A stretch of DNA of 64,000 nucleotides, taken from contig CM074806.1 in assembly GCA_037447605.1 (NCBI GenBank), positions 4,154,001-4,218,000 on the forward strand. The letters run 5' to 3'. Below the pieces are notes generated by a model, which saw only the letters and a list, made by a program, of their open reading frames with translations, did no database searches and had not been told where the DNA came from. The position numbers and the translations under genes are program-made. The DNA comes from Zygnema circumcarinatum SAG 698-1b (Eukaryota > Plantae > Zygnematophyceae). Shown here piece by piece: positions 29,564-53,907 of the stretch; the first letter of the stretch is position 1, and each line of letters opens with the position of its first letter.

Positions 29564-32500
29564 CCGCGCGCCACGTGGCGCCCGGACAGCTCTCCCCGCG
29601 CTTCCACGCGGACTGCCACGTGGCCGTTCGGAGAGCCGATTGCGGAGTGCCGCGCCTAGTCAGCCCTAAAACGAGCCAATCGGAGCTTTTGGGGCGGGGG
29701 CAACAAGCATGCTGACGTGGCATCGCGGCTGAGCAGTCTCCCATGTGTCTGGACATGCCAGGATTGGTCTGTACAATCTCTTTGGTCAAGTTCGGTTGCG
29801 GGCGGTCGCGGGCTGCAGCCAATCGCGTGCGCGGCCAGCGCAAGGTCAAATTTGACTTTTGCAATACAAGCTGACGTGGCGTCTCATGACTGGTCGAGGC
29901 CGCAAACGTTTTCTTTTCGAGCCATTTCCGAAATCCTCGTTGGCACCGACAAGTGCCACGTAGCAAAATCCAGAACCATCGTCTATGATTGGCTATTCTC
30001 GTCTGACTCGGATTTCGTCCAGCATCCAACCATAAAACGACAAAAGAGAGATGAGAGTTCCCGTCGAACGGTCAACCCTCCCACTGACATCAATTTTGAC
30101 TTATTTCACCTAATCCAACCAATCACATGCTTGCCGTACCTCCCGATCCTGCCAAATCTGAAAAATTGCGTAGGGTTACCGTACCAGCTGGCCGGCTGCC
30201 ATTGGCGGAGCACTCAGAAGGCCCTTACGGAGCCTGTCGCTTTGCAAAAGGACAAAAGTGGTCGCCATCTGTCCGCTATTTGCTGATCTCAGTGAACCTC
30301 GCTGAACCTCGAATACTGTAGTTTGGAAATAAACTTGACTGCTGCATTCACACCTTTTTTGTCTAGATACACACCTATTTTCGTCGGACAGATTTTATTT
30401 TAGAATAGAAAGTGTTAAAAACCCTAAAAACCCTAAAAACCCTGAAACCCCTGAAACCCCTAAAACCCCCTGCAAGCAGTTCGCGCAACGCGACAGGAGA
30501 GGTCAGGGAGGGTTTTGCTCCTCCAGCATAGTTCTTCGCCTCATCCTATACATTGTTCTCCTTCCAACAAAAACTTGAACAACATGAATGGTGAGCTCAC
30601 GTGCTGGCCAGCTCTAGCGGAAGTTCTAACGATTAGCACTCAGCCGGTGCTGTTGCGCATGTTGCTGGCAATGATGGCTTGCATGGTCCGCAGCAATGTT
30701 GGCTTCTCCCAGAGATCTAATGTCTCTGGCAATGCTTGCGGAAATAAGATGGGTTTTCTGGGTTTTCAACACTTTCTTTTCTAAAATAAAATTTGCTCGG
30801 CGAAAAAAGGTCTGTATCTAGACAAAAAAGGTGTGAAAATAGCAGTCTCCTATTATTTTATAGCAATTGTTTCACGTCTCAAGTTATTTACATTTTACAC
30901 AAAGGCAGGCTCCTACCGAAATGTCGCACTTTATTTCCAAATTCATTTGGAAGGAATACCTGCCAAATGCTACCTCCGTAAGGCTGCGCCACTGTACGTG
31001 CTAAATCGCTGTACCGGTTTCAGTTTCCTGCTACGGCAGGTCAAATTTCCACACTGGCCTCGCCCTCCCTCCCTCCCTCCCTCCTCCCTCCCTCCCTCCC
31101 CTCCCTCTCCCTCTCCCTCTCCCTCTCCCTCTCTCTCCCCCCACCTGCGCGGCCTGCCGCCCGGAGCGCTCCGCGGCCCGCTGCGCGCGCAGGAGGACGG
31201 CCCGCAAGGCCTGAGCGGCCGCCGCCTCCGCCGCCGCCGACATCCGCGCGCCACGTGGCGCCCGGACAGCTCTCCCCGCGCTTCCACGCGGACTGCCACG
31301 TGGCCGTTCGGAGAGCCGATTGCGGAGTGCCGCGCCTAGTCAGCCCTAAAACGAGCCAATCGGAGCTTTTGGGGCGGGGGCAACAAGCATGCTGACGTGG
31401 CATCGCGGCTGAGCAGTCTCCCATGTGTCTGGACATGCCAGGATTGGTCTGTACAATCTCTTTGGTCAAGTTCGGTTGCGGGCGGTCGCGGGCTGCAGCC
31501 AATCGCGTGCGCGGCCAGCGCAAGGTCAAATTTGACTTTTGCAATACAAGCTGACGTGGCGTCTCATGACTGGTCGAGGCCGCAAACGTTTTCTTTTCGA
31601 GCCATTTCCGAAATCCTCGTTGGCACCGACAAGTGCCACGTAGCAAAATCCAGAACCATCGTCTATGATTGGCTATTCTCGTCTGACTCGGATTTCGTCC
31701 AGCATCCAACCATAAAACGACAAAAGAGAGATGAGAGTTCCCGTCGAACGGTCAACCCTCCCACTGACATCAATTTTGACTTATTTCACCTAATCCAACC
31801 AATCACATGCTTGCCGTACCTCCCGATCCTGCCAAATCTGAAAAATTGCGTAGGGTTACCGTACCAGCTGGCCGGCTGCCATTGGCGGAGCACTCAGAAG
31901 GCCCTTACGGAGCCTGTCGCTTTGCAAAAGGACAAAAGTGGTCGCCATCTGTCCGCTATTTGCTGATCTCAGTGAACCTCGCTGAACCTCGAATACTGTA
32001 GTTTGGAAATAAACTTGACTGCTGCATTCACACCTTTTTTGTCTAGATACACACCTATTTTCGTCGGACAGATTTTATTTTAGAATAGAAAGTGTTAAAA
32101 ACCCTAAAAACCCTAAAAACCCTGAAACCCCTGAAACCCCTAAAACCCCCTGCAAGCAGTTCGCGCAACGCGACAGGAGAGGTCAGGGAGGGTTTTGCTC
32201 CTCCAGCATAGTTCTTCGCCTCATCCTATACATTGTTCTCCTTCCAACAAAAACTTGAACAACATGAATGGTGAGCTCACGTGCTGGCCAGCTCTAGCGG
32301 AAGTTCTAACGATTAGCACTCAGCCGGTGCTGTTGCGCATGTTGCTGGCAATGATGGCTTGCATGGTCCGCAGCAATGTTGGCTTCTCCCAGAGATCTAA
32401 TGTCTCTGGCAATGCTTGCGGAAATAAGATGGGTTTTCTGGGTTTTCAACACTTTCTTTTCTAAAATAAAATTTGCTCGGCGAAAAAAGGTCTGTATCTA

Positions 32501-32763
32501 GACAAAAAAGGTGTGAAAATAGCAGTCTCCTATTATTTTATAGCAATTGTTTCACGTCTCAAGTTATTTACATTTTACACAAAGGCAGGCTCCTACCGAA
32601 ATGTCGCACTTTATTTCCAAATTCATTTGGAAGGAATACCTGCCAAATGCTACCTCCGTAAGGCTGCGCCACTGTACGTGCTAAATCGCTGTACCGGTTT
32701 CAGTTTCCTGCTACGGCAGGTCAAATTTCCACACTGGCCTCGCCCTCCCTCCCTCCCTCCCTC
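29404..32763. repeat. 1680-bp tandem duplication with breakpoints in (CCCT)n tracts
   Basis: Identical ORFs at offset 1680 (29717/31397, 30127/31807, 30515/32195, 30793/32473). Duplicates PLPBP exon 1 (29563 and 31243) and its upstream region. No N gap. Confidence 0.93.
30337..30847. mobile_element. Long-TIR (~100 bp) non-autonomous element, MULE/foldback-like
   Basis: 30337-30440 (gactgct..ttcacaccttttttgtctagataca..attttattttagaa..gaaagtgtt..aaaaccc) is an imperfect inverted repeat of 30751-30847. No TSD found. Second copy at 32017-32527 is due to the duplication. Confidence 0.55.
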
Positions 32764-32777
32764 CCTCCCTCCCTCCC

Positions 32778-35700
32778 TCACGCGCGGTAAAACCTCTGAG
32801 CCGCCCCTTTCCGGCTTCCCTGCACAACTCAAATGCAAGAGAAAAGGCCGATAAATTGAAAAAAGATTCGATTGACTGACTGGCCCGAAACTCAACGCAA
32901 TGCCATGCCATGCCACACATGCCACACATGCCATGCCATGCCATGCCATGCCACACCATGCCATGCGAGCGGGGCCCACCAGCTTCTCGTTGAGTTCCTT
33001 CCTCAGGCTGACGAGGTCCGGCTCCGTGCGCCCTCCGACCATGGCCACCGCCGTGAGGCGGAGCTTCTTGGCCTCCTCCTCCCCCCCCCCCTCCCCCCCC
33101 GCCCCCTCGCGCGCCGCCGCCATGTCCGCCAGCGTGAAGGCGACGGCCGGGTGCGGACTGCTTCCGAGAAGCTTCGTCCGCACCGCGCGGGACTTCTCCA
33201 GACACTCCGACGCCTTCGCGTACTCGCCCTGCCACTCGTCAGTTCCAACCGACCCAAACGGTCAGCATCATGCCCACTAAAAGGAATAGTAGAGAGAGAA
33301 TGAGAGAGGGCGAGAGGGAGGGAGAGGGAGGGAGAGAGTTTTCAACAAAAAGCACTTGAAGGGGTCTACATACATACATGATTACAGTATATATATACAG
33401 AAAGAGAAGAGAGCGAGAGAAAGAGAGAGAGAGAGAGGCAGAGGGAGAGAGAGCGAGAGAGCACTCACATTCCTGCTATACACAATGCCGAGAGCATCGA
33501 GCACATCCGCGAGATGAAGGTGCGCCTCGTCCTCATTCGACTCGAGCAGACGGCGCGCCTCCTCCAAATACTTTCTCGACAGGTCCCGCCCTCCTTGGAG
33601 CCAATGAGAGGCCGCCAGGTGTCCCAAAGCCTGCGCTACCTTCACATTCGCTGTGGCCCCAAACGACCGCAGCTTGTCCCGGGCAGCTGCCAAAATTTTC
33701 TGCGCCCGGGCGTGCTGCCCGGCCCGCACCAAACTGAGCCCGAGGAGGAGGGCATACTGCGGCGCGGCCTCCTCCAGGGCCTTGGAACCCTTCGCTATTC
33801 GGAAGCAGTTCTCCGCAAGAATGGGCCCCTTCTCCGCCATAGTAAGCTTGGGGTTATCCATTCCCTCTCCCTCCTCGAGGCCCTCCCACACCTCTCCCGC
33901 TGTCCCTCTCACCTCCCCACTGGCGCCCCTTGCCAGCTCAGCATACACGTGGAGAAGCAGCATTCTCACAGCGTGCTGCTCTGCAATGAACGATGTTCCA
34001 TGCCCTTTGAGCAGTTTCAGTTGAACTAGGAGCAGTTTTTTGCAGTGGTTTAGAAGCGGAGTCCCCTCTTTGTGCCCTCCCCCCATTAGGGCCCATCTGG
34101 TGAAGCTCAGGGTCTCAAGCAGAGAGTCGCTATCTTCCTTTGCCATTTGAATAACAAATGTAAGCATTTTAGCCGCTGCTTTCTGCCGATTTTCCGGAAA
34201 ATGAGCGCTTCCAAAACTGCTAAGTGCGGGTCTCCATTCCGGAGCAATATTAGTGGGAGACATAACGGTCTCTCCCTTAGAGGAAGTCACACTTACAGAG
34301 GAAGGATTGAAGGGGATAGCCTGCTTCATTTCTTGGGGTCTTAGGAAGGTGGTAGGCTTGACTTCGGCGGCTTTGGGAGGAGGAGGAGAAGGAGGAGGAG
34401 CTTTAACAAATACAGAACTGGAAATATTCTTTTGAGGCATAGCCGGACCTTTAACAGTACCCCTGCTTCTTTTATTATTGACATTTTCATCCTCATCTTC
34501 TGAATCCGAGTCACAAAGATTCATGCCTTCGGGTGGTTTCGAATCAAAAGCTGCCCTTGAAAGCGGGTTGCTTCCGACTACATTTCGAGATTTTTCCTGG
34601 ACCTGTAACGGAACAACGGCAGCACGGAAACAGTCATGGAAATGCTGCTGACTGGCAGCGGTCTGATAGAGGCGAAAGTAAAGCTTTGACATCTCTCTGT
34701 ATGAGTGGAGGTCGAGAGAGAGAGTGGGAGTGCTGATCCGTCTTGAGAGAAGGAGGCTCTCCATGTGCACATCTACAGCCAATTCCAACCATTTGCTACC
34801 CCCAAAAGCGAGCCCATTTTCCACCACATAGCTCGCCAAATCCTTCATTCCAAATACAAGCAGACTCTCCTCCCTTTCTTCTGCCGCATAGCCCCCCAAA
34901 GGGCCGGAAATATCCTTTGATGGAAGCTTCTCCGCCCTTCTTGCAAGCTCACTTTGAAGCTCTCTCACTTCAGAAGCAACAGCATCAAGCCCCACTGAGT
35001 TTCCGTACAGCTTGTAATGAAGTCTATGGGCCATAAGAAGGAGCTCAAAATTTGAGCCTGAATATTGCTTTGAGAGCTCTTCGCAGCTTCCGAGAAGCTT
35101 CTCGGCCTGTTCGATCTCCTTCCTTCCAGACCCACTTTGAACCCTAATTGCAAAGGACTTATAGAACAAAAATTCTCTTTGAAATGGTCCAATGGCTTTT
35201 CCGCTTTGAAGGGCATCTTCACACACTTGCAGGGCTTGGATTGGTTGATCTGTTCGAGCCCAAAATTCGGCCAATCGGACTCCAATAATCCAAATTTGAC
35301 CAAAAGTTTCTCGGCTACTTTGGTATAATTCTCGCCTGCCCCAAGCAGCGGCGAAGTGAGGAAAAGTTTCTTCAAAGCAGCGGACCGAAATTAAAATTTT
35401 CAAAACTGCCCGAGCAGCTGCTACAGCTCGGGCTCGTCGGGTTCGAATGTACGTTTGAAAAACGGGATGAAAGAGGAGAGCTCCCGATTGGTTAACTTTC
35501 TTAGCCAAGCCATGGTTGAGAAGGAGGGTTTGAGCTGCTTCTACGTCCTCTCTATGGGTTTGGGAAGTCGAACCTCTGCATTCATTCAGGAAATAGGGAT
35601 AAAAATTCTCTTCAGAAAATATCAACAACAAGAAGTACAATGTCGGGTTGAAAATGACTGCTCTTCATCTTATAGTATTCATTGAGGTGAGTTTTTTCAA

Positions 35701-36021
35701 TGATTGTAGATTTGGGTTGCTATGGGGCGAGTGCTGGTCAATAACTAGTCAAATTAATAAAAATAAGTCAATAACTGAGCCTCCTTCTGTAAGTTGTAGA
35801 AAAATGGGGGCAAGCAGTCTGATCTTTCATGACGATGATGCATGTGACGTCAATATGAAATTACTTGTTTTCAGATACAAGGCAATCTAAATAATGAATA
35901 ATAAATATCTTCACCTTCGTCTTCATATTCAGCTTAATGGAAACATGGTAAATGTTGATGACAAACAATGACGATACACTAACATGTGTGTGCTCCCCCC
36001 CCCTCTCTCTCTCTCTCTCTT

Positions 36022-36081
<60 letters not shown>

Positions 36082-37103
36082 CTTCCTTTTTTTTTGAAGT
36101 GTATGATACTCACAAGAACTTGTTCGCACACTCGCAAAGCAGAGGAAGAGGGATGGGCTGCGGCCCAAACCACCCCCCAACCGCCGCCATGGCCCCTGCA
36201 AGCTCCTTCGCGCTCTCCTCCTCCCGCCCGCATGGCAGGCCCTCTATCCACATGTCGAAAACTGAAGATAGCCTGCATAGAAATACTGAATATGAATGAG
36301 CATGTAAACTCAGTTCTCGACTGTTACATCTTGCATAGATCCACAATAAAGAGAGAAACTGTGCAATAAAGGTGATGAGTTTGGAAGCGAATGTATGGGG
36401 CTCTCGACATGTACATCTGCAAAGAGGAGAAGGAGGAGAGGACTGGTAGAGAGGGAATCCGGCCAAAGGAAAATGAAGGAGATAGGAGGGCGAGGAGTAA
36501 GAAAAGAGAAGGGAGAGGCGTGTGAGAGAGAAAAGAAGTGGGCAAATGTAAAATACACTGTCCAAGGGGACGATTGAGATCCCACAGCTAGCTAGCTATT
36601 CAAACCTTTCACTCACCACGAAGGCTTCAAAAAACATTTTTCGGTCATATTTCCGTTTTTGAGCCCTTCAAACTCTCCCGCCTTCTGCAGTCTGCTCAGC
36701 ACCTTTGAAGCTCCCTCGCCCCTCTTCAAGATCGCTCCCACTGCCTCCAAAGCAAGAGGGTATCCGCTCACTATGGAGACTATCTCCTCTACAACCACAG
36801 AGTCTTCCTCCGCAATGTCAGACTCAGCTGAGATCACCTGCAAGGCGGAGACAGTAAAATTTTCGGACGAGGATTTGAATCCGCTCTCCTTCAAATCAGA
36901 GTGCAGTAAACAAGGAGGAGGGGGAGGGGGAGGGAGAAGGGGAGATGCACCTTCCAGGCTTCCCTTTCGTCCATGAGTCCCAGCTCAAGGACCTCCACTC
37001 CTCTTACATACTTCTCTGTGGTTATTAGCACGTGGCTTGAGCCGGCCTGCAGAGACGTCTCACCACCTGACTCGACTACGTGAGAGAGAGAGGGGAAGAA
37101 GAG

Positions 37104-37144
<41 letters not shown>

Positions 37145-38379
37145 AAAAATGGGGGGAGGAAAGGGGCGGTGGGGGGGGGGGAAGGGTGGGAGGGAGACGG
37201 GGAAGGGGGCGGTAGGAGGGTGGGGAAGGGGCGAGGAGGGATGAGGTTGAAGGGGGAGAAAGGAGGGGGGAGATGGAGAGGGAGAAGGAGAGGGAAATGG
37301 AGGGAGTGGGAGAGGGAGATGGGGAAGGGTGAAAGGGGAAAGGGGCAGACGACAAGACTCCTCCTGAGGAATCATGGGCTTAAGGTGGTTACAGAGAGAC
37401 AGAGTGGAAGGGGGAGTGGGGAAGGGAGAGAAAGAGGGAGAGAGAGAGGGAGACACCTTTGGAATCATGGTTTCGAGAAGGTCCACGTCCCGCACATCGT
37501 CCAGAATTAACAGATATCGCTTTCCTTCCTCGAGGACCCGCCGGACCTGCTTCATCTTCAAGGCTTTACTGCCCTTTTCAGCAACCTTCAACCCCTCCCA
37601 AACCCCAAGTTAAAAAAATATATAAACTTATAATCCAAAAGGATACACATCTTGCAGTGAAGAAAAGTCAACCGCTGTTAAATTTCCTTTTCTCGTCTTT
37701 TCCCTTTTTCTTTTTTTCCCCCCTTTTTTTTTTATTTTTTTGTACCCACCTGGGAGTGGAGCACCATGCGCAAATTCACAAAATTCTGTTCTGCAGCGAC
37801 GGGATTTGCATCCACCCAGAGAATGCCATCGTAATTGGACGCTTGGCCGTATGCGAATTCAAGCGCAATACTCGTTTTCCCAAACCCGCTAGGGCCGTAT
37901 AGGGCCACAACTTTGGCCTGCCATTTGAACATCTTCGAAGTTAAAACCACAACTAGGTTTGTCCTTTTTTATCTCACATAAGAAAGGAGGCAGACATTTC
38001 CCATTAACATTTCTTAATTTTTAAAATCTCCATGATTTTCCGAACTTATTGTAAGGGGTCTCGGGTATTACCCCTTCCATGTGATCAAAACGCTTTTGCC
38101 ACCCCTGAAAGGAGCATTGTAACTGTTCCATGGCCACCTTGTTCCCTACAAATTTTTCTTTTCGGGAGAGCGGGAGGAGGAGAGGAGCGGGAGAGGGAGA
38201 GAGAGGAAGAGTGAGAGGCAGCAAATCTTCGAAGAAATGCGAGAATAGCTCAAATGCCTGGTTGTAGAGGTCGGTGGCAAAGGAATTGATGCTTTTCTGG
38301 TTGAGCCCAGCCATGGAGGAGGGCATTGGGGCGTGGGATAATACGACAACAAATAGACCTGCCTGAACATGAAGAGGAA

Positions 38380-38451
<72 letters not shown>

Positions 38452-39325
38452 TCAGTAAGGAATTCAAAAAACAGGAAGGGACTTGCAGAGTCATCGTAGT
38501 ACTGAGGACCCTCGAGCCTAGAAGCCACTCAGAACATGCATATTCCCCATACAGAAACCTATCCCTTCATGAAACCCCTCCCTCTCCTCCTCCCTCTCCC
38601 TCTCCCTATCCCTCTCCCTCTTCCTCCCTCTCCTTTTTTCCCTCCCCGACATGAGCAACTTGCATGCCCTACCTTGGTTACAGCCTCCCCAATCTCCGCT
38701 CCCATCTCCTTCCACTTCTTGCTGCTCTCTACCTCCCTCATCTCCTCCAAAGGGCCCCTCAGAAACTCCATCGCTTGCAGGAGCTCCATCAGCTCGTACC
38801 GTACAATGGAGGAGCTGCCTATCTTACAAGCCAAGTGGAGGAATTCCACTCCCAAAGCGACTCCTTCTTCCTGCAAAAATCACCCCAAAATAGAATAAGC
38901 CGGCTTCAGTTCTCCAATGACGAGGAAGAGAGAGAGTGGGAGAGAGAAAGCGAGAGAGAGAGGGAGAGAGAGAGAGGGTTTGAAAGGACACTTACCTCAT
39001 CAAGGAGATCTTCCGAACCATCAATAGCACTCTCTACTAAAGTGGCAATGTCTTTCCAGACTGAAGTTTTCTCAGTCAGTAAAGCGGAAAGTACAATCTC
39101 TATGATTCCCATCATTATTTGCTTATCAGTGAGCTCTCCACTCCGCTCGATAAAGTCCTTCACAAGGTCCCCCACTTCTTCTGCTAAATCCGCCGTCCGA
39201 TCCGAATCTTCCAATCCGAGGGGATCTTCAAAGTTTATTTTTGGCTTTTTCACTTCCGAACTTGAGCGAGAAATCATCCTTTGCAAGTTCAATCGGCAGC
39301 TGCTGAAGCATGGAAACCAGTCCAT
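32778..39325 (-). CDS. STAND NTPase: helical N-terminal domain - NB-ARC - TPR repeats, ~1330 aa
   Basis: Exons 39325-38996, 38870-38673, 38362-38072 (LSRKEKFVGN), 37917-37750 (P-loop GPSGFGKTS), ~37586-37457 (Walker B LLILDD), 37046-36951 (HVLITT), 36837-36617 (GYPLAL), 36272-36114 (WFGPQPIPLPLL), 35575-33469 (LFHPVFQ; TPRs), 33228-32980 (TPR GEYAKASECLEKSRAVRTKLLG), 32819-32778. Splice phases agree. Confidence 0.88.
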
Positions 39326-43603: not shown

Positions 43604-44681
43604 GGCTTGACGCGGAGGGAGAACTTTGGCGCAGACTTTTGCAGAAGGAACAAACGAAAAGAGGAGTAAGAGATAGGCCAATGCGACTGCTCTTCAGATA
43701 AGCGAAGGCGAAGCTCACATGCCTTGCATGCATGGAGGCAAGCATGGCATGTTCGTACGCCTATGCTGTAACGAGAGGCAGGGACGATGTTCTAAAACAA
43801 TGTGACTCATGAGAAATTTAGGCATTAAACTTGCACTCGAGATGTTTGTCTCAAGCTTTCAAGTGGTGATGATGTGCACTTGTCAAATGTTGGCTGGTGA
43901 CGACATTGTATTCGGCACGAGCACATGAGAGACCATGATCACCAACTCGTCGCTTACAGTATCGCGAACGAACGAAGCCGAAATGGGCCCGTTCTGGGCT
44001 GGGTTCCAAAAACTCAGTTGAGCATCTTCCAATGCTCATCCGCCACGCGCACACTTTGTACACGTGGCTCTTTTCTATTTCAGTACAGTACAGTAGGTTC
44101 GCAGGGGAGTACGGCCCCGAGAACGCGACAGTCGCCAGGAACGACCCCTGCTCTATGTTCGCAGTTCTTTCTGTCGCCGTTCAACGCTAAATCTATCGAC
44201 AAAGAAGCCACAAATCCAGTTTAACAGAACAAAATTTCCATGTTCACAAATGGCCTGTCAGTCTGACAATTGGCTTGGGAATAAATAGTTTTCGAATTCA
44301 GTACTTTCGAATCTTGAGCATACCAAACAGTTTGGGTATAAAACTGTACTCATTCGATATCCAAAGGAAGGAATTCTTGAGAAATGCCAGAACCGGAACT
44401 GTAACTTTAACTGTAACTACAATTGTCTACAGTCTCCTTGTCTGTAACAGTCGTCCCGTGTCGTTCTGTAGACGAACTAGGGAACATGGAAAGGCCGCTC
44501 GCTGGCTCTCCCGCGTCCCCTCTTTTAGGGTTTCTCCTCTTCTCGCAGAAGGCAGGGAGTGCTGAGCGCAGGGCAGGGCCGGGCCGGGCAGGGCAGCAAC
44601 CCTCCATTGTTTGGCTCCTCTCCCTCTCTTCCTCTCTCTGTCCCTCTCCTTCTCCCTCTTGAGTCCCTCCCCCTTTCAGCC

Positions 44682-46209
44682 ATGGCCCTCCTTCCAAAAG
44701 CAGCCAAGCTTTCAGTCGCGGCTGCGATGCCCCTCTCGCAGCGCCTCGCCACCGCTCTTGCTCCCTCTCCCTCTCTCTCCCCCGTTCCCTCTCCCTCTCT
44801 CCCTCTCTCTCAGCAGACGCGCGCCGCCTCTTCCGCTGCGGACTTTGTGATCGCGAAGGTGGACGACCTCATGAACTGGGCCCGCACGGGCTCCATGTGG
44901 CCCATGACCTTCGGCCTCGCGTGCTGCGCCGTGGAGATGATGCATGCAGGCGCTGCGCGCTACGATCTGGATCGTTTTGGCATTATTTTTCGGCCGAGTC
45001 CGAGGCAGTCCGATGTCATGATCGTCGCAGGGACGCTCACGAACAAGATGGCTCCGGCGCTTCGCAAGTAAGTGGCATTTCTTTCCTGGCAAACGTTTTG
45101 AGGTTTGACGTTTTGAGGTTTTTTAGGGTTGGAGAGAGTGGATGGTCCTGGGGAGTCGGTTTCGTGGGTGATAGAGGTTTGCTTTTGAAGACTGTGTATT
45201 GGTGGTTTCTGGATGAGGAGGAAGGGAGGTCGAGGAGTAGGGATTGCTTGCTTGAAGGGAAGGGGGAGCAGTGTTTTCTATCCCTGTGGAAGAGTTGAGT
45301 TTCAGTGGGACATTGATGAGCTGGATACACACGTAAGTGTGTATTGTGATTTTTTGCTCTTGCTTATAATTGTACGTCAGCTACTGAACATGCAGACAGG
45401 GAGACAGCCTGCCAAGTGGATTTTGGTTTTGTGCAGTAGTCAGTTTCACTTTTTCTAGTTTTTCTTTACGTGTTTATCAAATGAAATACGCGAGTTCTTC
45501 TGGAAAAGTCTTAACTTTAGAGCCTACTTGGATTCTAAAAGTGCGTCCCGGAAAGAGGAAACATTGGTAAGAAGTGCTTACGTTTTGCAGGTCGTCGTAT
45601 TCGTCAACGCAGGCAGGCAGGCTGCAGGATGTTTTTTTGAATCTGTACTAAGACTTATTTGAACCTATGGATACATACTTGAAAAAGTTAGCCAGTGCAA
45701 GAAGAGCGGCGTCAGAAAGAAGAGTGGGATGGGTTGAAGAGGGAGAGAGATGGGAATCCAGAGAACGAGAGGAGGAAGAGCGTGTGGGGAGCGAGATGGA
45801 ATGGTAGGATGTGAGTAACCAGAGGGGACAAGCAGGGAAGGAAAGGAGACAGAAGGAGTGCATCCTAAGCTTGTCCTGTTTCCACCTAAGCTAATCACAA
45901 TCCTTCTCTATTTCTCCAAATATTCTTTATGTTTGCTAACCTTTTCATTTTTTTTACTTTCTCAAACATCGCAGGGTGTATGATCAGATGCCTGAGCCCA
46001 GGTGGGTGGTTTCCATGGGGAGCTGCGCGAATGGGGGTGGCTACTATCACTACTCCTATTCAGTTGTGCGAGGATGTGATCGGATCGTTCCAGTCGACAT
46101 CTATGTCCCCGGCTGCCCTCCCACAGCAGAGGCTCTTCTTTATGGCCTTCTGCAGCTTCAGAAGAAGATCAACCGCAGGAAGGATGTGACAGTGTGGTGG
46201 AATAAGTAG
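44682..46209 (+). CDS. NDUFS7: Complex I PSST subunit (NADH:ubiquinone oxidoreductase 20 kDa)
   Basis: Exons 44682-45067 (transit-like N-terminus, [19 protein letters not shown]) and 45975-46209 ([22 protein letters not shown]). Confidence 0.97.
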
Positions 46210-47048: not shown

Positions 47049-48824
47049 TTATAAATTGTCCCCATGAAGGCTGGGGTTCCACATCCGGCGCCCTATCCCC
47101 CTGCTAGTGTCCCGGCAAGACATGAGATAGGACGGATCGGGTTCTAAGACTGGCGTCAACTCATTCTCTCCCGTCACCTCTGCTGCACATTTCCGGTCAT
47201 GGGGTGGAAAGTGATAGCAGGGTTCGCCCGACTCGACCCTCGCACATGCTGGCTTTCCATGGGCGTTTCTTTTCCCAACTGTGGCGTAAATGTCTACAAG
47301 ATAGGGAGGCCTGCCTTGCAAGCCGGCAGCAACATAACCAAATGTGGAAAAGAAAGTTGTGAAGAGGGCATCACAGAAGCTGAGGAGGAAGATTTCTGTC
47401 AGAGCCTGCTCATCTGCTTCCAGAAGATGAATTTCCACCAGAGCAGTGCTGAAAGATAACACATTCACTACGGTTCCATCCACTGCAACTCCGCCATCGT
47501 AAAACTCCTTGAATTCGGTTATATGATGTGGATGAAGTGAGGTTACTAACAGTGCCACCTTCTCCGCATTCGTGTTCTTTACAACTTTGTCCAAAACATC
47601 TCTATCCTCATCACGCCATTTGAATTGCGGATGCCCGGACCGATAGCCACTCCAAAGGTTATTCCACTTGTCCGAGGGAATTGGATGAGGAAGTACGGTA
47701 CTAACATTTACGAGGCAATACCGAGCATAACCGGTCGAGACATTGTGGTCAGCACTTGCTCTCATCTGGAGGCCGACCCGCCTGTCCGCATGCATCATAT
47801 TGTTCTCGTAGAGCCTGCTTATCCTTTCCCAAACGTAATTATTAGGGTTAATAAGGTAGTGAGCCAAGTGGAAGAACGGTGCTCGGTCAGGAAAAAGCTG
47901 ATCGAATTCCTGCTGGAAGCTGGAGATAAGGCACAGCCCGGGAACGAAGAACTGATCTGAAAGCATAATCAGAACCTGCACACTGCTCAGCACCTCCTGC
48001 ACTTTGTCGCAGAAGAAATTCTGCGAAGAATGAGTGTACATGAACGCTAGATCCAGGAACACAGAAATTTCCTTCTTCTCCTTCGCCTTCTTATTCTCTT
48101 TCACCTCCTCCTCCTCCTCGTCCTCCACTTTCTCCACCTCCCCCGCCTTCGCCATTAGGTTATCCAGAAACGGTCCATCCTGCGCCACTCGGCGCATTTC
48201 CTCCTCCGCGCTGTCCGGCAAGTGCCAGGTTCCATGAGGAAAAGGATCACAGAGTAAGCGAAGAAATCCAGAATCGAACACCAACAGAGCCCTGTCTGTG
48301 AGAAGAGCGTAGAGGAAAGCGGAGACTACAGACTCCACCCTGTTCCCTAAGCCCGAACTCTGCGGCTTAAATATGACGTATTGGCATGTGGCATCGGGCG
48401 GAGCCGTCTCTCCTCTAATCAAAGCCGTCCAGTTATTCACAGAGGCCGTACATTGCTTCATCCTTTCTTCAAACTGGCGAAGCCTCTCTTGCAGGACAAC
48501 ATGCCCCCCCGCCACCTCCAGACCTTCAGGAGGAGGAGAGAAGCAGTCGCGCTCTTGCCGCGCCCAGCAGGCGCCATCGCTGGTAGAGCGCTGGGAGACG
48601 CGCGTCTCTCGGGAGCAGGAGGATCCGGAGCGGGAGGGGAGAGGCGGAGATGCGGAGGGAGGAGGAGAAGTGGTGCAGTTAGCTGTAGGGCGCAGCCATG
48701 GTGCCTCTAGAAATAGAAAAAGAAGCACTGAGAGCGTAAGTGCTAGAAGAATAAGCTGAAGCGGTGGGAGAGAAAGAGCCTTCGGCCATGGCCGGCCCGT
48801 TAAGGAGCTCCGGCCGAGCTGCAT
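47049..48824 (-). CDS. GT37 alpha-1,2-fucosyltransferase (xyloglucan/AGP FUT family), intronless, paralog A
   Basis: Type-II TM anchor LILLALTLSVLLFLFL, CQYV..SGLGNRVESVVSAFLYALLTDRALLV, RVGLQMR, STFGYVAAGL, EPCYHFPP. Start placed at ATG 48824 (alternative 48929). Confidence 0.92.
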   Translation of the reverse strand: MQLGRSSLTGRPWPKALSLPPLQLILLALTLSVLLFLFLEAPWLRPTANCTTSPPPSASPPLPSRSGSSCSRETRVSQRSTSDGACWARQERDCFSPPPEGLEVAGGHVVLQERLRQFEERMKQCTASVNNWTALIRGETAPPDATCQYVIFKPQSSGLGNRVESVVSAFLYALLTDRALLVFDSGFLRLLCDPFPHGTWHLPDSAEEEMRRVAQDGPFLDNLMAKAGEVEKVEDEEEEEVKENKKAKEKKEISVFLDLAFMYTHSSQNFFCDKVQEVLSSVQVLIMLSDQFFVPGLCLISSFQQEFDQLFPDRAPFFHLAHYLINPNNYVWERISRLYENNMMHADRRVGLQMRASADHNVSTGYARYCLVNVSTVLPHPIPSDKWNNLWSGYRSGHPQFKWRDEDRDVLDKVVKNTNAEKVALLVTSLHPHHITEFKEFYDGGVAVDGTVVNVLSFSTALVEIHLLEADEQALTEIFLLSFCDALFTTFFSTFGYVAAGLQGRPPYLVDIYATVGKRNAHGKPACARVESGEPCYHFPPHDRKCAAEVTGENELTPVLEPDPSYLMSCRDTSRGIGRRMWNPSLHGDNL

Positions 48825-49524
48825 GGAGGGAGAGGGAGGGAGGGAGAGGAGAGGGAGCCACGGGGAGGGAGGGAGAATGTTGGAGGCGAGGAACAGGGTG
48901 GGATTCTTGCGAGCCTGTCTACGCTCCATGTCGACGCTGTTGTGTTCAGCGTGAAAAGACACTGGGAGCAGGACAAAACTGTCAAAACCAGTTTTCCGTA
49001 CGACAGAAGAAAAATGGAGAATTGTACGGCTGTAGGTGATCGTACGAAGAGGAGATCGTGCCATGGAGAAATTCCGGTTAAAGTTTAAATCTAGTACATT
49101 CCAATTTCATTTTTGATATAATATATGTTTTGCGCAATATACGTCTTCTTCTTAACGAAGCCCAAGTGACGCGTGTACGGCCGTGAGCCTGCCCGCGATC
49201 TGCTCCGATTCAGGGCGGAGCAGATATTCCCGTGACATGACGCGACGTGACGTGATGTAACGTGTCGTCACGCGGTCGGTCGACAATTCTGATCTGAGAG
49301 CCGTGCCGTGAGAGCTGTGCCCTACTGCCCTGCCATTCCACCATGGGTCCACTGATGAACTCGGTTTGGTACAATCATGATCCCGCCCGCCCGAGCATCC
49401 ACCATCAGAAGCATCATCATCATCATAAATTCAAGTCTAAGTTCTAAGATTTATTTGAAATTGTCTGTACTTCAGATGCTTCTTATACAGATACATATAT
49501 ATATATTTTTTTATTCCTATTACA

Positions 49525-50040: not shown

Positions 50041-51058
50041 CGAAAGAGAGAGAGAGAGAGAGGCGAGGGAAAGCGAGAGGGTGACGGAAAGAGAGTGGGA
50101 AAGAGGGTTTTTGCAAAAAACCTTTCTCGCACCTCGTCCTTGATCCACTCGTGAAGGATCACTTACGTCTGTCAATGGATTCAAACGAATCGTCTCCTTC
50201 TTCAGACTCGTGAACACCCTGATGCTTGCTGGTCCTCCAAGGAGGCACTGACTTCTGCTTCAGACCTAAAGAAAAAAACGCGAAAGAAAGAGCAATCAGC
50301 AAATGTTTTCACCTTCCGCAAATGAGGGAATCCTCAACAGTACCAAAGTCTGACTGAGCTTGCTTCCAAACCAATGGCAGAAAGAAAAAATCTGCAAGGT
50401 CAAGCAAGGGAACGAGCATACATGGCGACATCTTCCTGGAAATGCTCATTGCTGCCTGCATGCCTGCTCTGCCTGCATGCCTGCTCTGCGCCTTCGGTGC
50501 TCGCAGGCTCTGAGAGCAGCCTCCCTCGTCCTATCCCTCACCCTCGCCCTCGCTCTCGCCCTCACTCTCGCCCTCGCCCTCGCCCGCCTCCCTCGCAGCA
50601 GCGGCAGCAAAAGCAACAGCAGCAACGTCTTGCAAAGCAAATATATCCTTTGGCGCGGAAACGAGCGCCGGTTTCCGCGACCTCGGCGGGTTCATTTTTT
50701 GAATTTTTTCGCGCGCCCAAGCGGTTGAAGAGGCAGGCGACGCCGACAGTGGCCGGTCCCTTCCAATGAAAAAACGCCACGCTTCTGTATGAACTCGATA
50801 CGTGTCGACACTCCTTCCAAGGGGGCGAAGGGTTCGCTTTGACTGCGAACTACATGTCGAGCACCTGTCGCAGGTCGGACCAACCGTTGGATCAACCATT
50901 ACCGTACGAAACGCTTGAGAACCATTCACGACCTAGCCAACCATTGTCAAGGGTCCAACCATTGCCAATGGTTCCAACCATTGGTCGGCGAACCATCTCC
51001 ATTGGTTCCTACTATGGGTCGGCTAATCACTGCCATTGTTTCAACGGTATAAAACTTT

Positions 51059-51930
51059 CACAGTTCGGACCAGTGGATCGGCAACCATTGGACAACCATT
51101 GGATGGCAATGGTTGGACGTCTACTGGTCGGCAACCAGTCGAATGGTTGTTGGCAACCAGTCGACTGGTTCGGAACCAGTGGATGCCACTGGTTGGCAAC
51201 CAGTCGAATGGTTGTTTCGATCCGGCGGCACTGGTTGGCAACCAGTCGACTGGTTGTGAACCAGTGGCATCCACTGGTTGGCAACCAGTCGAATGGTTGT
51301 TTCGATCCGGCAGCACTGGTTGGCAACCAGTCGAATGGTTATATCCATTAAATCAAATGGTTGGCAACCATTAAATTGTCGGTGTACGGATCCCCGTATT
51401 GTCGATATACTGTAAATATTTTCCGTACGATTTTCCGGCAATTTAAAAAAAAATGCCGGAAAATCGTACGGAAAATATTTACAGTATATCGACAATACGG
51501 GGATCCGTACACCGACAATTTAATGGTTGCCAACCATTGGATCACTGGTTCCGAACCAGTCGAATGGTTGTTTCAGTCCTGCGCCACTGGTTCGCAACCA
51601 GTCGACTGGTTTCCAACCAGTGGATGCCACTGGTTGGCAACCAGTCGAATGGTTGTTTCGGTCCGCAACCACTGGTTGGCAACCAGTCGACTGGTTTGGA
51701 ACCAGTGGATGCCACTGGTTGGCAACCAGTCGAATGGTTGTTTCGATCCGCAACCACTGGTTGGCAACCAGTCGAATGGTTTGGAACCAGTGGATGCCAC
51801 TGGTTGGCAACCAGTCGACTGGTTGCGAACCAGTGGCATCCACTGGTTGGCAACCAGTCGAATGGTTGTTTCGGTCCGCAACCACTGGTTGCCAACCAGT
51901 CGACTGGTTTGTCTAATGGTCCGATCTGTG
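51059..51930. mobile_element. 872-bp non-autonomous DNA transposon with foldback-like internal structure
   Basis: Ends CACAGTTCGGACCA / TGGTCCGATCTGTG (13/14 inverted match). 8-bp direct repeat AAAACTTT at 51051-51058 and 51931-51938. Interior holds arrays of ACTGGTT-N3-AACCAGT and a central hairpin. Confidence 0.8.
51356..51538. repeat. Perfect 85-bp inverted repeat with 13-nt loop
   Basis: 51356-51440 is the exact reverse complement of 51454-51538. Loop is atttaaaaaaaaa. Confidence 0.97.
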
Positions 51931-52096
51931 AAAACTTTCATTGAACTCGCGATGGCGAGGCCATCAAATGTACATGGACAAAGGCAAAATGTGGAACCAC
52001 GAAGGACTGGTCACAAAGGACCGATTTCAACCATTGAATTACCAACCATTGCCATTCATCCAATGGGTAATCCACGTTCCGGGCGGGGATGTCGAG

Positions 52097-52118
52097 TTAG
52101 GGTTAGGGTTAGGGTTAG
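52097..52118 (+). repeat. (TTAGGG)x3.7 telomere-type repeat
   Basis: ttagggttagggttagggttag, about 30 nt upstream of the GT37-B ATG. Confidence 0.85.
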
Positions 52119-52146
52119 AGGGAGGGCCGGGGCGGGGCAGGCAGCC

Positions 52147-53907
52147 ATGCCGTCGCCCTTCCCCGAGCAGTCCCACCTGCGCCCATCGCGCACCACGCCG
52201 ACCAGTCTGCCGCGACCATGGCTGCGCACACCCGGTGGAAATCTTTCCGCTCACCCGGTAACGGCTGGGCTCTTCATGCTGCCCGCCCTCTATTTGCTCT
52301 TCCTCGCCGTTTCCTCGCTCCAGGCGCCATGGCTGCTCTCCGCAAACACCTCCATTACGTCGATTCCCTCTCCATACTCAAAGGAGATCTTTTCTCGCCC
52401 TGGCTGCTCCCTGAAGGAACGTGTTGTGCAGCGCGCGCGCCTCCATGGCAGCTGCTGGGCAAAGCGTGAGCGCGACTGCTTCTCTCCTCCGCCGCAGGGC
52501 CCAGCCATGGGGGACGGAAGCTCTCTCCTGAAAGAGAAGCTGCGGCAATACGAGACCAGGCAGCGGCGGTGCACGGCCTCCGTGAAGGACTGGGCGGCGC
52601 TGATCGCAGGAGAGGAGGCTCCTCCTGACGCCACGTGTCAGTACGTGATAGGGCACCCTCAGAGCCAGGGCATTGGGAACCGCCTGGAGTCCGTGGTGTC
52701 CATCTTCCTCTACGCGCTGCTCACCGAGAGGACCCTCTTAGTGCACGACTCGGAGTTTCTGCGCCTCCTCTGCGACCCCTTCCCCAACGCCACGTGGCGC
52801 CTGCCTGAGAGCGCGGAGCAGAAGGTGCAGGAAATGGTGCAGCAAGGCCCACACTTTGACAATTTTTATAGCGGCGGAGAGGGTGGGAATGCAAGCCAAA
52901 GTGTGAATCATATTTTCGTGGATCTGGCATATATTTATAGCCATGGCGGACAGAATGTCTACTGCGATAACGCGCAGGAGGCGCTGAAAAGAGTTCAGTC
53001 TCTGCTTCTGCGCTCGGAGCAGTTCTTTGCTCCCGGTCTGTTCCTTATTCCGAGCTTTCGAGGTGAGCTCGAAGGGCTTTTCCCCGACCGAGCGCCTTTC
53101 TTCCATTTGGCACGCTACATTGTGAACCCGAATAACCAGCTGTGGGAGAAGATAGTTAGGCTCTACGAAAGCGAAATGATGCACGTGAATCGGCGGGTAG
53201 GTGTACAGATAAGGCAATGGGCTAGCCGCGACAAAGACGTGAAGATTGATTTCATGATGCATTGTATTACAAATATTACAAAAGTTCTCCCTCCGCCTAT
53301 CTCTTCGGAGGAGTGGAGTCGACTCTGGAGGGGGGAGCAGTCGGGCGATTTGCAGTTCAAGTGGACGGATGAGGACAGAGCTCGCATAGAGAGGGTTATC
53401 ATAAACGAAAATCCAGAACGAGTGTTGTTGCTGGTTACTTCTCTGCAACCGCATCATCCGGCAAATTTCCGGAAGCATTACCGGGATGGAGTTGCAGAAG
53501 ACGGGAGCATAGTCACTGTGCTCTCTCTCAGCAGTGACCAACAGGAGAGCCATTATCTTTCAACTGACGAGGAAGCGTTGACAGAGATCTTTCTTCTTAG
53601 TTTTTGCGATGTTCTGTTTACGACCTTCTTTTCCACGTTCGGATATGCAGCTGCTGGATTGCAAGGCAGGCCTCAGTACCTTGTGGATGTGTACGCCACA
53701 GTGGGGCAAGACATTGTAAACGGTCAGCCTGCCTGTGCGCGAGTCGAGTCAGGAGAGCCGTGCTTTCACTACCCCCCTCATGAGAGAAGCTGCGGGGCAG
53801 GTGTGCCAGACACAAGCATTGACCCGCCATATCTCCTGCCGTGCCGTGACACGGAAAATGGCAGAGGACGCCGAATGTGGAACCCAGAGGTTCTCTCCGG
53901 CGTGTGA
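52147..53907 (+). CDS. GT37 alpha-1,2-fucosyltransferase, intronless, paralog B
   Basis: TM anchor LFMLPALYLLFLAV, CQYV..QGIGNRLESVVSIFLYALLTERTLLV, RVGVQIR, STFGYAAAGL, EPCFHYPP. Collinear with paralog A. Confidence 0.92.
   Translation: MPSPFPEQSHLRPSRTTPTSLPRPWLRTPGGNLSAHPVTAGLFMLPALYLLFLAVSSLQAPWLLSANTSITSIPSPYSKEIFSRPGCSLKERVVQRARLHGSCWAKRERDCFSPPPQGPAMGDGSSLLKEKLRQYETRQRRCTASVKDWAALIAGEEAPPDATCQYVIGHPQSQGIGNRLESVVSIFLYALLTERTLLVHDSEFLRLLCDPFPNATWRLPESAEQKVQEMVQQGPHFDNFYSGGEGGNASQSVNHIFVDLAYIYSHGGQNVYCDNAQEALKRVQSLLLRSEQFFAPGLFLIPSFRGELEGLFPDRAPFFHLARYIVNPNNQLWEKIVRLYESEMMHVNRRVGVQIRQWASRDKDVKIDFMMHCITNITKVLPPPISSEEWSRLWRGEQSGDLQFKWTDEDRARIERVIINENPERVLLLVTSLQPHHPANFRKHYRDGVAEDGSIVTVLSLSSDQQESHYLSTDEEALTEIFLLSFCDVLFTTFFSTFGYAAAGLQGRPQYLVDVYATVGQDIVNGQPACARVESGEPCFHYPPHERSCGAGVPDTSIDPPYLLPCRDTENGRGRRMWNPEVLSGV

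What the first reader, a model, noticed from the sequence alone, without database searches (positions are those of the whole stretch)
32778..39325. NLR-like receptor with fungal-style architecture: helical (RPW8/MLKL-like?) N-terminus + NB-ARC + TPR
Seen: an intact 11-exon gene with NB-ARC motifs in canonical order (FVG, GPSGFGKTS, LLILDD, VLITT, GYPLAL, FHP) followed by TPRs, not LRRs. Known: plant NLRs use LRRs; plant TPR-type NB-ARC proteins (TNPs) carry TIR; four-helix-bundle-STAND-TPR architectures are typical of fungal and bacterial immune receptors. Inference: the ~240-aa N-terminus is amphipathic-helical and has no TIR or kinase motifs. The segment ELLQAMEFLRGPLEEMRE..EIGEAVTKAGLFV..KSINSFATDLYNQAFELF resembles the RPW8/MLKL/MCAfunc four-helix bundle. 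This could be an uncharacterised cell-death receptor class in a basal streptophyte.
Basis: partly seen in the sequence, partly recalled or inferred. Interest (0 to 1): 0.8.

Follow-up and report, generated by a model that had tools for sequence, protein, structure and literature searches.

The report
Algal NLR-like receptor, fungal-style layout
This is a real, spliced and expressed algal gene for a switch-type receptor (helical N-terminus, NB-ARC ATPase, TPR repeats) whose N-terminus probably holds a four-helix bundle like those that kill cells in plant, animal and fungal immunity, a layout common in fungi but barely described in the plant lineage.

Summary
A minus-strand gene of 11 exons (39325..32778) encodes 1,329 aa. 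RNA contigs from three runs join exons 1-9, and depth and homology support the last two joints.

There is no LRR, TIR or kinase. Its ATPase module is nearest to bacterial NB-ARC-TPR proteins (FxSxx_TPR, AfsR), not canonical plant NLRs.

The spliced protein could not be submitted to the tools. I therefore folded the N-terminal domain of its only two full-length relatives among 1.84 billion cluster representatives (30% and 22% identity).
- Both fold confidently as about three helices followed by a four-helix bundle.
- These scores are within chance range for helical bundles, and no Pfam family matches.
- Language-model neighbours are fungal Goodbye/DUF7708/NACHT_N domains, which published work describes as an MLKL-like bundle with an N-terminal extension.

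Verdict: a new variant of a known kind. Cell-death function is inferred, not shown. The scan's first readers also noted two other NB-ARC-TPR genes and a 4HB gene cluster elsewhere in this genome; I checked none of them.

The parts
32778..39325 (-). Whole coding span of the 11-exon gene (1,329 aa); the transcript extends upstream of the ATG
   Evidence: Exon model with GT..AG at all introns. Spliced RNA contigs in X1-X3. An in-frame stop lies 16 codons upstream of the ATG at 39325.
38996..39325 (-). Exon 1 = aa 1-110: short Cys-containing N-terminus (MDWFPCFSSC), then the roughly three-helix N-terminal extension (aa ~41-107)
   Evidence: Helices of the homologue models mapped through the alignment. 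This part alone aligns to P0001 at 30% identity, E 2e-6. The exon boundary coincides with the subdomain boundary.
38673..38864 (-). Four-helix bundle, helices 1-2 and the start of helix 3 (aa 113-176, exon 2)
   Evidence: Mapped from AF2 models of P0001:118-335 and P0005:60-262. This part of the models superposes on NRG1.1 CC-R, MLKL, MLA13 and Rx.
38219..38362 (-). Four-helix bundle, rest of helix 3 (conserved KAGLF..V motif) and helix 4 (aa 177-224, exon 3)
   Evidence: As above. The bundle part alone aligns to P0001 at 34% identity, E 3e-21. Conserved columns are shown.
38162..38218 (-). Pro/Leu-rich linker (aa 225-243), coding and not an intron
   Evidence: No GT in the stretch. RNA contig pieces are continuous over 38071-38361.
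37870..37896 (-). Walker A / P-loop GPSGFGKTS (aa 281-289)
   Evidence: Sequence. Exon 4 hits NB-ARC positions 19-56 and NCBIfam FxSxx_TPR positions 27-64 at E 1.5e-9.
37496..37513 (-). Walker B LLILDD (aa 354-359)
   Evidence: Sequence. Exon 5 hits NB-ARC positions 86-117 and FxSxx_TPR positions 88-125.
37017..37031 (-). RNBS-B-like VLITT, followed by E instead of the usual sensor-1 R (aa 378-382)
   Evidence: Sequence. The homologues read the same way: TTEK in P0001 and TSKF in P0005.
36748..36765 (-). GLPL-type motif GYPLAL (aa 429-434)
   Evidence: Sequence. Exon 7 hits NB-ARC positions 182-208.
36137..36178 (-). GGWFGPQPIPLPLL motif of the winged-helix region (aa 510-523)
   Evidence: Conserved in P0001, P0005 and P0003, and present in similar form in the bacterial NB-ARC-TPR proteins P0014 and P0016.
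35464..35472 (-). MHD-equivalent FHP (aa 566-568)
   Evidence: Sequence. FHP is invariant in P0001 and P0005.
34168..34515 (-). Low-complexity Ser/Pro/Asp-rich insert inside the C-terminal helical region (aa ~885-1000)
   Evidence: Sequence. The alignment to P0001 breaks between aa 931 and 976.
33472..33639 (-). TPR_12 unit (aa 1177-1232, end of exon 9)
   Evidence: Pfam TPR_12 at 32.5 bits against a cut-off of 30.1.
33097..33228 (-). TPR continuation in exon 10 (aa 1234-1277)
   Evidence: Pfam TPR_12 at E 1.1e-3. The joint position restores canonical TPR spacing.
32778..32819 (-). Putative last exon (13 aa plus stop); the joint is unverified
   Evidence: GT..AG and frame. The blastp alignment to P0001 runs to aa 1327. 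Deep RNA-like runs hold the intron.

Best explanation
The gene encodes an expressed NLR-like STAND receptor built from three modules.

1. N-terminal domain (about 225 aa, all helical). Roughly three helices, encoded by exon 1, cap a four-helix bundle of the MLKL / HeLo / RPW8(CC-R) shape. This is the layout published for fungal 'Goodbye-like' domains.
2. A divergent NB-ARC ATPase of the bacterial/fungal NB-ARC-TPR lineage. The P-loop, Walker B, GLPL-type motif and the histidine of the MHD motif are intact.
3. A long helical and TPR C-terminus.

Likely working (inferred from the family, not shown). The TPR region holds the ATPase in an ADP-bound off state. Binding of a ligand, microbial or self-derived, allows nucleotide exchange and oligomerisation. 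Oligomerisation brings the N-terminal bundles together. The N-terminal extension is displaced, and the bundles then act on a membrane (pore or ion leak) or recruit a partner, ending in regulated cell death or a strong stress response.

What is shown: gene structure, splicing, expression, domain order, motif integrity, and the fold predicted for two homologues. What is inferred: sensing, oligomerisation, membrane action and any immune role.
For: - Splicing and expression: RNA contigs at word depth 11 (X1) and about 90-108 (X2, X3).
- NB-ARC pieces colinear on the Pfam model, with TPR_12 above its cut-off.
- Homologue P0001 aligns over aa 14-931 and 976-1327 of the model and passes the Pfam NB-ARC threshold, 33.1 against 23.5 bits.
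- ATPase module matches NCBIfam FxSxx_TPR at 6e-46 (P0001) and 8.5e-37 (P0005). The window's own exons 4 and 5 match it at 1.5e-9 and 8e-4.
- Best PDB sequence relatives are AfsR, then the plant NLRs NRC1 and ADR2.
- N-terminal domain is homologous to P0001 at 94 bits, E 2e-27, against a maximum of 20 bits for 100 shuffles.
- AF2 models: pLDDT 82 and pTM 0.80 for P0001; pLDDT 76 and pTM 0.73 for P0005.
- MLKL, CBL four-helix bundle, MLA13 and AtMLKL3 appear in both lists, and Rx CC appears for both models.
- Language-model neighbours of the domain are all fungal Goodbye / DUF7708 / NACHT_N clusters. Foldseek gives weak hits to Goodbye proteins in AFDB clusters.
- PMC9815663 describes Goodbye-like domains as an MLKL-type four-helix core with a longer N-terminal helical extension.
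Against: - No sequence or profile match of the N-terminal domain to RPW8, MLKL_NTD, HeLo, Helo_like_N, Goodbye or any other Pfam family, even at E<=10.
- Foldseek finds nothing significant in PDB, Swiss-Prot AFDB or AFDB clusters: every TM-score is under 0.5. The Atlas shape search gives only unrelated families, each covering at most half of the domain.
- The models are of homologues, built on a 5-row alignment, and not of the window's own protein.
- The bundle's first helix is internal. The domain is acidic overall (net charge -15 and -6 for its two halves), with no basic patch that I identified.
- Sensor-1 Arg is replaced: the motif reads TTE.
- The function of Goodbye-like domains is itself unknown (PMC4986451, PMC9815663).
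- There is no functional or infection-related expression evidence.
Confidence: 0.55

Rival explanations
1. It is a STAND switch whose N-terminal helical domain is an adaptor or oligomerisation module rather than a membrane-damaging executioner. On activation it would recruit or regulate another protein, in the way CARD or PYD domains do. The output need not be cell death.
For: - The bundle's first helix is buried behind a 110-aa extension, and the domain is acidic.
- No profile match to any executioner family.
- Up-down four-helix bundles are a common arrangement: designed bundles, the CBL 4H domain and the vinculin tail score similarly.
- The function of Goodbye-like domains is listed as unknown (PMC4986451).
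Against: - NRG1.1 CC-R is the top or second PDB match in two independent models and covers nearly the whole target.
- The nearest language-model neighbours are fungal NLR N-terminal domains of the MLKL-related superfamily (PMC9815663).
Confidence: 0.3
2. It is a non-immune regulatory or housekeeping STAND NTPase with TPRs, for example a transcription- or metabolism-linked regulator like bacterial AfsR or MalT, or an NPHP3-like scaffold, acquired from bacteria.
For: - The closest solved relative of the ATPase module is AfsR.
- The strongest profile match is the bacterial FxSxx_TPR family.
- The TPR region weakly matches TPR_NPHP3.
- The gene is steadily expressed in several runs.
Against: - There is no DNA-binding (SARP) or other regulatory domain.
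- The family is extremely sparse: 11 hits among 1.84 billion cluster representatives. A conserved housekeeping gene would not look like this.
- First readers report several paralogues in the genome (unchecked), which suits a receptor family.
- The gene has ten spliceosomal introns and lies among ordinary eukaryotic genes.
Confidence: 0.1
3. It is a decaying or mis-modelled gene: an assembly or annotation artefact, or a pseudogene that happens to be transcribed.
For: - The 3' end abuts a 99.8% identical duplicated segment that stops at the stop codon.
- The last intron is unverified.
- Introns are full of microsatellites.
- No identical protein is on record in the databases.
Against: - The reading frame is open over 3,990 nt across ten canonical introns.
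- Spliced contigs appear in three runs from two studies.
- All catalytic motifs are intact.
- There is full-length colinear homology to P0001.
Confidence: 0.03

Closest known systems
Fungal Goodbye-like (NAD1 / DUF7708 / NACHT_N) - NB-ARC - TPR NLRs (Dyrka 2014, PMC4986451; Wojciechowski 2022, PMC9815663)
   Same: - Same three-part order.
- NB-ARC of the TPR-associated lineage.
- N-terminal domain of about 200 aa, predicted as a four-helix MLKL-like core preceded by extra helices.
- Nearest language-model neighbours of the algal domain.
   Different: - No Pfam Goodbye, DUF7708 or NACHT_N match.
- The host is a streptophyte alga, not a fungus.
- The gene is split by ten introns.
- Goodbye function is itself unknown.
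Plant helper NLRs NRG1/ADR1 (CC-R/RPW8 - NB-ARC - LRR) and CC-NLRs
   Same: - A four-helix bundle sits directly upstream of an NB-ARC.
   Different: - TPR instead of LRR.
- No RPW8 profile match.
- The bundle is preceded by a 110-aa extension.
- The NB-ARC matches the bacterial FxSxx_TPR profile far more strongly than Pfam NB-ARC, and matches AfsR slightly better than plant NLRs.
- No MADA or MAEPL-type motif stands at the N-terminus, by inspection of the translated sequence. This was not searched formally.
Plant TNPs (TIR - NB-ARC - TPR), said to be the only TPR-containing NLR-like class in plants (PMC9806590)
   Same: - NB-ARC followed by TPRs in the green lineage.
- TNP NB-ARCs also have actinobacterial and ascomycete relatives, according to that paper.
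   Different: - No TIR: a helical domain stands in its place.
- The RNBS-B motif reads TTE, not TTR.
- Relationship of the ATPase modules was not tested here.
Bacterial NB-ARC-TPR STANDs (FxSxx-COOH system TPR protein NF040586; AfsR; the relative P0014, whose N-terminus looked CHAT-like by eye only)
   Same: - Homologous ATPase plus winged-helix module, including the GWFGP..IP..LL motif.
- TPR_10/12-type repeats.
   Different: - Different N-terminal domains.
- The score is far below the family cut-off (157 against 300 bits).
- This is a eukaryotic, intron-rich gene.
CC-like NLR-like proteins of Chara braunii and other streptophyte algae (Chia et al., bioRxiv 10.1101/2022.10.19.512840; review PMC10952240)
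   Same: - Algal NB-ARC proteins with CC/RPW8-like four-helix bundles and 'alternative C-terminal repeats'.
- Some Chara CC-like domains caused cell death in N. benthamiana.
   Different: - I could not compare sequences, so identity of the families is unknown.
- The papers as I searched them do not describe the extended Goodbye-like layout or a TPR partner for these bundles.

Membership tests
NB-ARC STAND NTPase (Pfam PF00931) | Walker A GxxxxGK[TS] and Walker B hhhhDD | tested here: met
   GPSGFGKTS at aa 281-289 and LLILDD at aa 354-359.
NB-ARC STAND NTPase (Pfam PF00931) | Match to the family HMM above the gathering score | tested here: met
   Window exons 4, 5 and 7 hit colinear parts at 17.6, 19.4 and 12.2 bits. 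Each is below 23.5 alone because the domain is split by introns. Full-length homologue P0001 scores 33.1 bits. A profile of P0001 and P0005 finds AfsR, NRC1 and ADR2 in the PDB.
NB-ARC STAND NTPase (Pfam PF00931) | RNBS-B sensor-1 arginine (TTR/TSR), GLPL and MHD | tested here: inconclusive
   GLPL-type GYPLAL and MHD-type FHP are present (His kept). Sensor-1 reads TTE-K, with no Arg, in this protein and in P0001.
Canonical plant NLR (NB-ARC-LRR) | C-terminal leucine-rich repeats | tested here: not met
   No LRR family hit. TPR_12 and TPR_10 are found instead.
TNP (TIR-NB-ARC-TPR) | N-terminal TIR domain | tested here: not met
   No TIR hit in the window's exons 1-3 or in the homologues' N-termini. 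The models are all-helical.
TNP (TIR-NB-ARC-TPR) | NB-ARC groups with the TNP clade in a phylogeny | not tested
   No TNP sequence could be obtained.
MLKL / HeLo / RPW8 (CC-R) four-helix-bundle executioner domains | Up-down four-helix bundle fold | tested here: met
MLKL / HeLo / RPW8 (CC-R) four-helix-bundle executioner domains | Sequence-profile membership (PF05659 RPW8, MLKL_NTD, PF14479 HeLo, PF17111 Helo_like_N) | tested here: not met
   hmmscan at E<=10 on four homologue segments and two window exons gave no such family.
MLKL / HeLo / RPW8 (CC-R) four-helix-bundle executioner domains | First bundle helix at the free N-terminus, releasable on activation | tested here: not met
   The bundle starts at about aa 113, and exon 1 (aa 1-110) precedes it with about three helices.
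MLKL / HeLo / RPW8 (CC-R) four-helix-bundle executioner domains | Membrane permeabilisation or cell death on expression | not testable with these tools
   Needs an expression assay.
Fungal Goodbye-like domains (PF17109, PF24809, PF17100) | Four-helix MLKL-like core plus an N-terminal helical extension, at the N-terminus of a STAND NTPase | tested here: met
   The layout is seen in both homologue models, upstream of NB-ARC-TPR. The definition is taken from PMC9815663.
Fungal Goodbye-like domains (PF17109, PF24809, PF17100) | Match to the family HMMs | tested here: not met
   No Pfam hit. There are only leads: language-model score 0.84 with 182-191 shared features, and Foldseek TM 0.32-0.41 to two Goodbye proteins.
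FxSxx-COOH system TPR protein (NCBIfam NF040586) | Score above the curated cut-off of 300 bits | tested here: not met
   157 bits for P0001 and 127 bits for P0005, confined to profile positions 3-412. This shows homology of the ATPase module only.

The most novel reading that the evidence does not exclude
Streptophyte algae keep a receptor class that joins an N-terminally capped MLKL/HeLo/RPW8-type bundle (Goodbye-like) to a bacterial/fungal-type NB-ARC-TPR chassis. If the bundle is truly homologous and lethal on activation, this would be a second TPR-based NLR-like class in the plant lineage beside TNPs. It would also be a living link between fungal Goodbye/HeLo effectors and the RPW8/CC-R domains of plant helper NLRs, with the exon-1 extension acting as a built-in safety cap.
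Probability: 0.2. Interest if true: 0.75.

Novelty: new variant of a known kind. Interest (0 to 1): 0.5.

Why it matters
Plant NLR research treats TNPs as the only TPR-based NLR-like class in plants (PMC9806590) and traces CC and RPW8 executioner bundles back to algae mostly through Chara. This gene gives a concrete, expressed algal example in which a bundle of that shape sits on the NB-ARC-TPR chassis typical of fungi and bacteria, in the extended 'Goodbye-like' form whose function is still open. It offers a compact test case for three questions:
- whether Goodbye-like domains kill cells;
- what the N-terminal extension does;
- how effector domains and NOD-repeat chassis were recombined early in the green lineage.

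If the domain turns out to be a plain adaptor, the gene is just one more lineage-specific STAND protein.

Tried and rejected
Searches that found nothing useful:
- The word-indexed protein search with the large exon found nothing, not even the gene itself. The genome's proteins are not in that collection within the length filter.
- An exact look-up of a neighbouring ORF also failed, so I could not name the organism.
- The word-indexed search with the N-terminal region of P0001 found only P0001.
- A metagenome scan with exon 9 found no relative.
- phmmer of exon 1 and of exon 9 against the PDB gave only designed helical proteins and noise.
- A language-model search with exon 1 alone was uninformative.
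- PADLOC gave no defence-system family.
- The Atlas shape searches gave unrelated families.
- An alignment that mixed short window exons with full NODs (A2) was unsuitable for a profile. I replaced it with A3.

Readings rejected:
- An intron in the Pro-rich linker: there is no GT and the RNA is continuous.
- A read-through C-terminus of 1,424 aa is less likely. It would run into a duplicated segment and a microsatellite, and it matches P0001 worse than the 13-aa last exon does.
- A paralogue in the same window: none found.

Not possible with these tools:
- Submitting the spliced protein as one sequence.
- Profile-profile comparison with the RPW8, MLKL, HeLo and Goodbye families.
- An NB-ARC tree including TNPs.

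Full report
**1. Is the gene there?**

Yes. I set exon borders from the sequence and obtained 11 exons, 3,990 nt and 1,329 aa, with GT..AG at all ten introns. The ATG at 39325 follows an in-frame stop 16 codons upstream. The stop codon ends at 32778.

Logan contigs of runs X1, X2 and X3 behave as RNA, since they skip introns. They show the joints 38870/38996, 37917/38072, 37585/37750, 36272/36617 and 35575/36114 with CT..AC ends, which is GT..AG on the minus strand. Adjacent exon-length pieces within one contig fix E2/3 (38362/38673). Record arithmetic within single contigs fixes the intervening exons 36951-37046 and 37457-37585.

Depth in the bins flanking intron 9 fits an acceptor near 33228. 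That choice also restores canonical TPR spacing and matches homologue P0001. The last intron (32820-32979) is unverified:
- X1 holds none of it, while deep runs of the same 2024 study as X2-X5 hold all of it. Those runs also keep low-depth copies of proven introns.
- The 13-residue last exon resembles the C-terminus of P0001, and the blastp alignment runs to aa 1327.

The Pro-rich stretch at aa 225-243 is coding. Introns are packed with CT/GA microsatellites.

**2. What the protein is made of**

- Pfam on the separate exons places exons 4, 5 and 7 colinearly on NB-ARC and finds TPR_12 above threshold at the C-terminus. There is no LRR, TIR or kinase.
- The motifs are a P-loop GPSGFGKTS, Walker B LLILDD, VLITT followed by E rather than R, GYPLAL and FHP.
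- NCBIfam gives a much stronger signal than Pfam. The bacterial FxSxx-COOH-system TPR protein model matches the ATPase module of the two homologues at 6e-46 and 8.5e-37. It matches the window's own exons 4 and 5 at 1.5e-9 and 8e-4.
- The best solved relatives by sequence are AfsR, then the plant NLRs NRC1 and ADR2.
- The word-indexed search from the P0001 ATPase module finds bacterial NB-ARC-TPR proteins. Language-model neighbours are bacterial and basidiomycete NB-ARC/nSTAND clusters.
- A motif GWFGP..IP..LL after the GLPL region is shared with these bacterial proteins.

So this is a genuine but divergent NB-ARC of the TPR-associated lineage.

**3. Relatives**

The family is very sparse. HMMER of exon 9 against 1.84 billion cluster representatives gave 11 hits. 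Only three matter:
- P0001: 1,594 aa, a EukProt Trinity transcript.
- P0005: 1,227 aa, a Logan contig of SRR8128907.
- P0003: N-terminally truncated.

These sources are shown. P0001 aligns over nearly the whole length at 30% identity. The source organisms are unknown to me. There is no paralogue in the window. First readers flagged two other NB-ARC-TPR genes and a cluster of MLKL/RPW8-like bundle genes elsewhere in this genome; I did not check these. Two xyloglucan-fucosyltransferase (GT37) genes in the window fit a streptophyte, which is knowledge-based inference.

**4. The N-terminal domain**

This is a limitation. Instead I showed that aa 14-232 is homologous to P0001 (94 bits, E 2e-27; 100 shuffles reach 20 bits at most) and to P0005 (E 6e-9). 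I then folded those two homologues, with the window's exons 1-3 as alignment rows.

Both models are confident: pLDDT 82 and pTM 0.80, and pLDDT 76 and pTM 0.73. Both are all-helical. Mapped back onto the window, exon 1 encodes about three helices (aa ~41-107).

Structure comparisons gave a mixed result:
- Foldseek found nothing significant in the PDB, Swiss-Prot AFDB or AFDB clusters, though two 'Fungal STAND N-terminal Goodbye domain' proteins appear weakly.

I therefore take the four-helix-bundle shape as supported and homology as open. No Pfam family matches, even at E<=10.

A language-model search returned only fungal NLR N-terminal families (Goodbye, DUF7708, NACHT_N) at 0.84 with 182-191 shared features. 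This is a lead, not proof. It fits the literature. Wojciechowski et al. (PMC9815663) show that Goodbye-like domains share the MLKL/HeLo four-helix core but carry a longer N-terminal helical extension, and they leave the function open. Dyrka et al. (PMC4986451) list Goodbye-like among the commonest fungal NLR N-terminal domains.

**5. Mechanism**

By analogy with STAND proteins in general, the TPR/helical C-terminus would sense a ligand and release the NB-ARC for nucleotide exchange and oligomerisation. That would cluster the N-terminal bundles. Whether these permeabilise membranes is inferred only from shape and neighbours.

Points against a simple MLKL/ZAR1-like release of helix 1 are the 110-aa cap, the acidic charge and the missing profile match. 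A speculative reading is that the exon-1 extension is an inhibitory cap. The N-terminal MDWFPCFSSC resembles acylation motifs by eye only.

**6. Novelty**

The architecture is ordinary in fungi and bacteria. In the plant lineage, TNPs have been called the only TPR-containing NLR-like class (PMC9806590). A review mentions algal NLR-like proteins with alternative repeats and CC/RPW8-like bundles (PMC10952240), and some Chara CC-like domains cause cell death in tobacco (bioRxiv 10.1101/2022.10.19.512840). I found no paper describing a Goodbye-like/4HB - NB-ARC - TPR protein in streptophyte algae. I rate it a new variant of a known kind, of moderate interest.

Noticed in passing
window 30620-31098 and 32300-32779; also 29457-29756 and 31137-31436: A tandem duplication with a 1,680-bp period lies just downstream of the gene. 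Segment 32300-32779 is 99.8% identical to 30620-31098, and the copy ends at a (GGGA)n microsatellite exactly at the gene's stop codon. The 3' UTR therefore lies inside a duplicated unit.
   Followed up: partly
window 47052-49064 (-) and 51361-53904 (+): Two xyloglucan fucosyltransferase (GT37, Pfam XG_FTase) genes sit in divergent orientation, at E 6e-68 and 3e-69. The second ORF begins inside the repeat-rich element that another first-reader note describes at 51051-51938.
   Followed up: partly
window 15838-17696: About 1.8 kb of (CCCT/GGGA)-type low-complexity repeat is open in several frames, as Pro/Ser/Leu-rich or Gly/Arg/Glu-rich ORFs of up to 583 aa. The same microsatellite recurs at 32738-32779, 43305 and 55640. 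It is probably not coding.
   Followed up: no
window 39325-39296 (aa 1-10): The protein starts MDWFPCFSSC. The two cysteines in a hydrophobic context recall S-acylation motifs at the N-terminus of membrane-anchored plant kinases. P0001 has a similar CFTSS stretch, but it is internal.
   Followed up: no
P0005 (L001:59-3742): The Logan homologue has a degenerate P-loop (APSGYEKS) where the window protein and P0001 have GP.G.GKT. It may be an ATPase-dead member of the family.
   Followed up: no
window 38996/38870 exon border: Exon 1 encodes exactly the N-terminal helical extension, and exon 2 starts at the first helix of the bundle. Both borders are phase 0. This fits modular assembly of the domain.
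   Followed up: partly
window 9677-10180 (+), 6092-6490 (-), 44559-45068 (+), 61590-62060 (+): The neighbouring exons carry a GRF zinc finger, a RING finger, the NADH-ubiquinone oxidoreductase 20-kDa subunit and a proteasome subunit. These are ordinary eukaryotic genes, with no obvious immune cluster around the receptor.
   Followed up: partly
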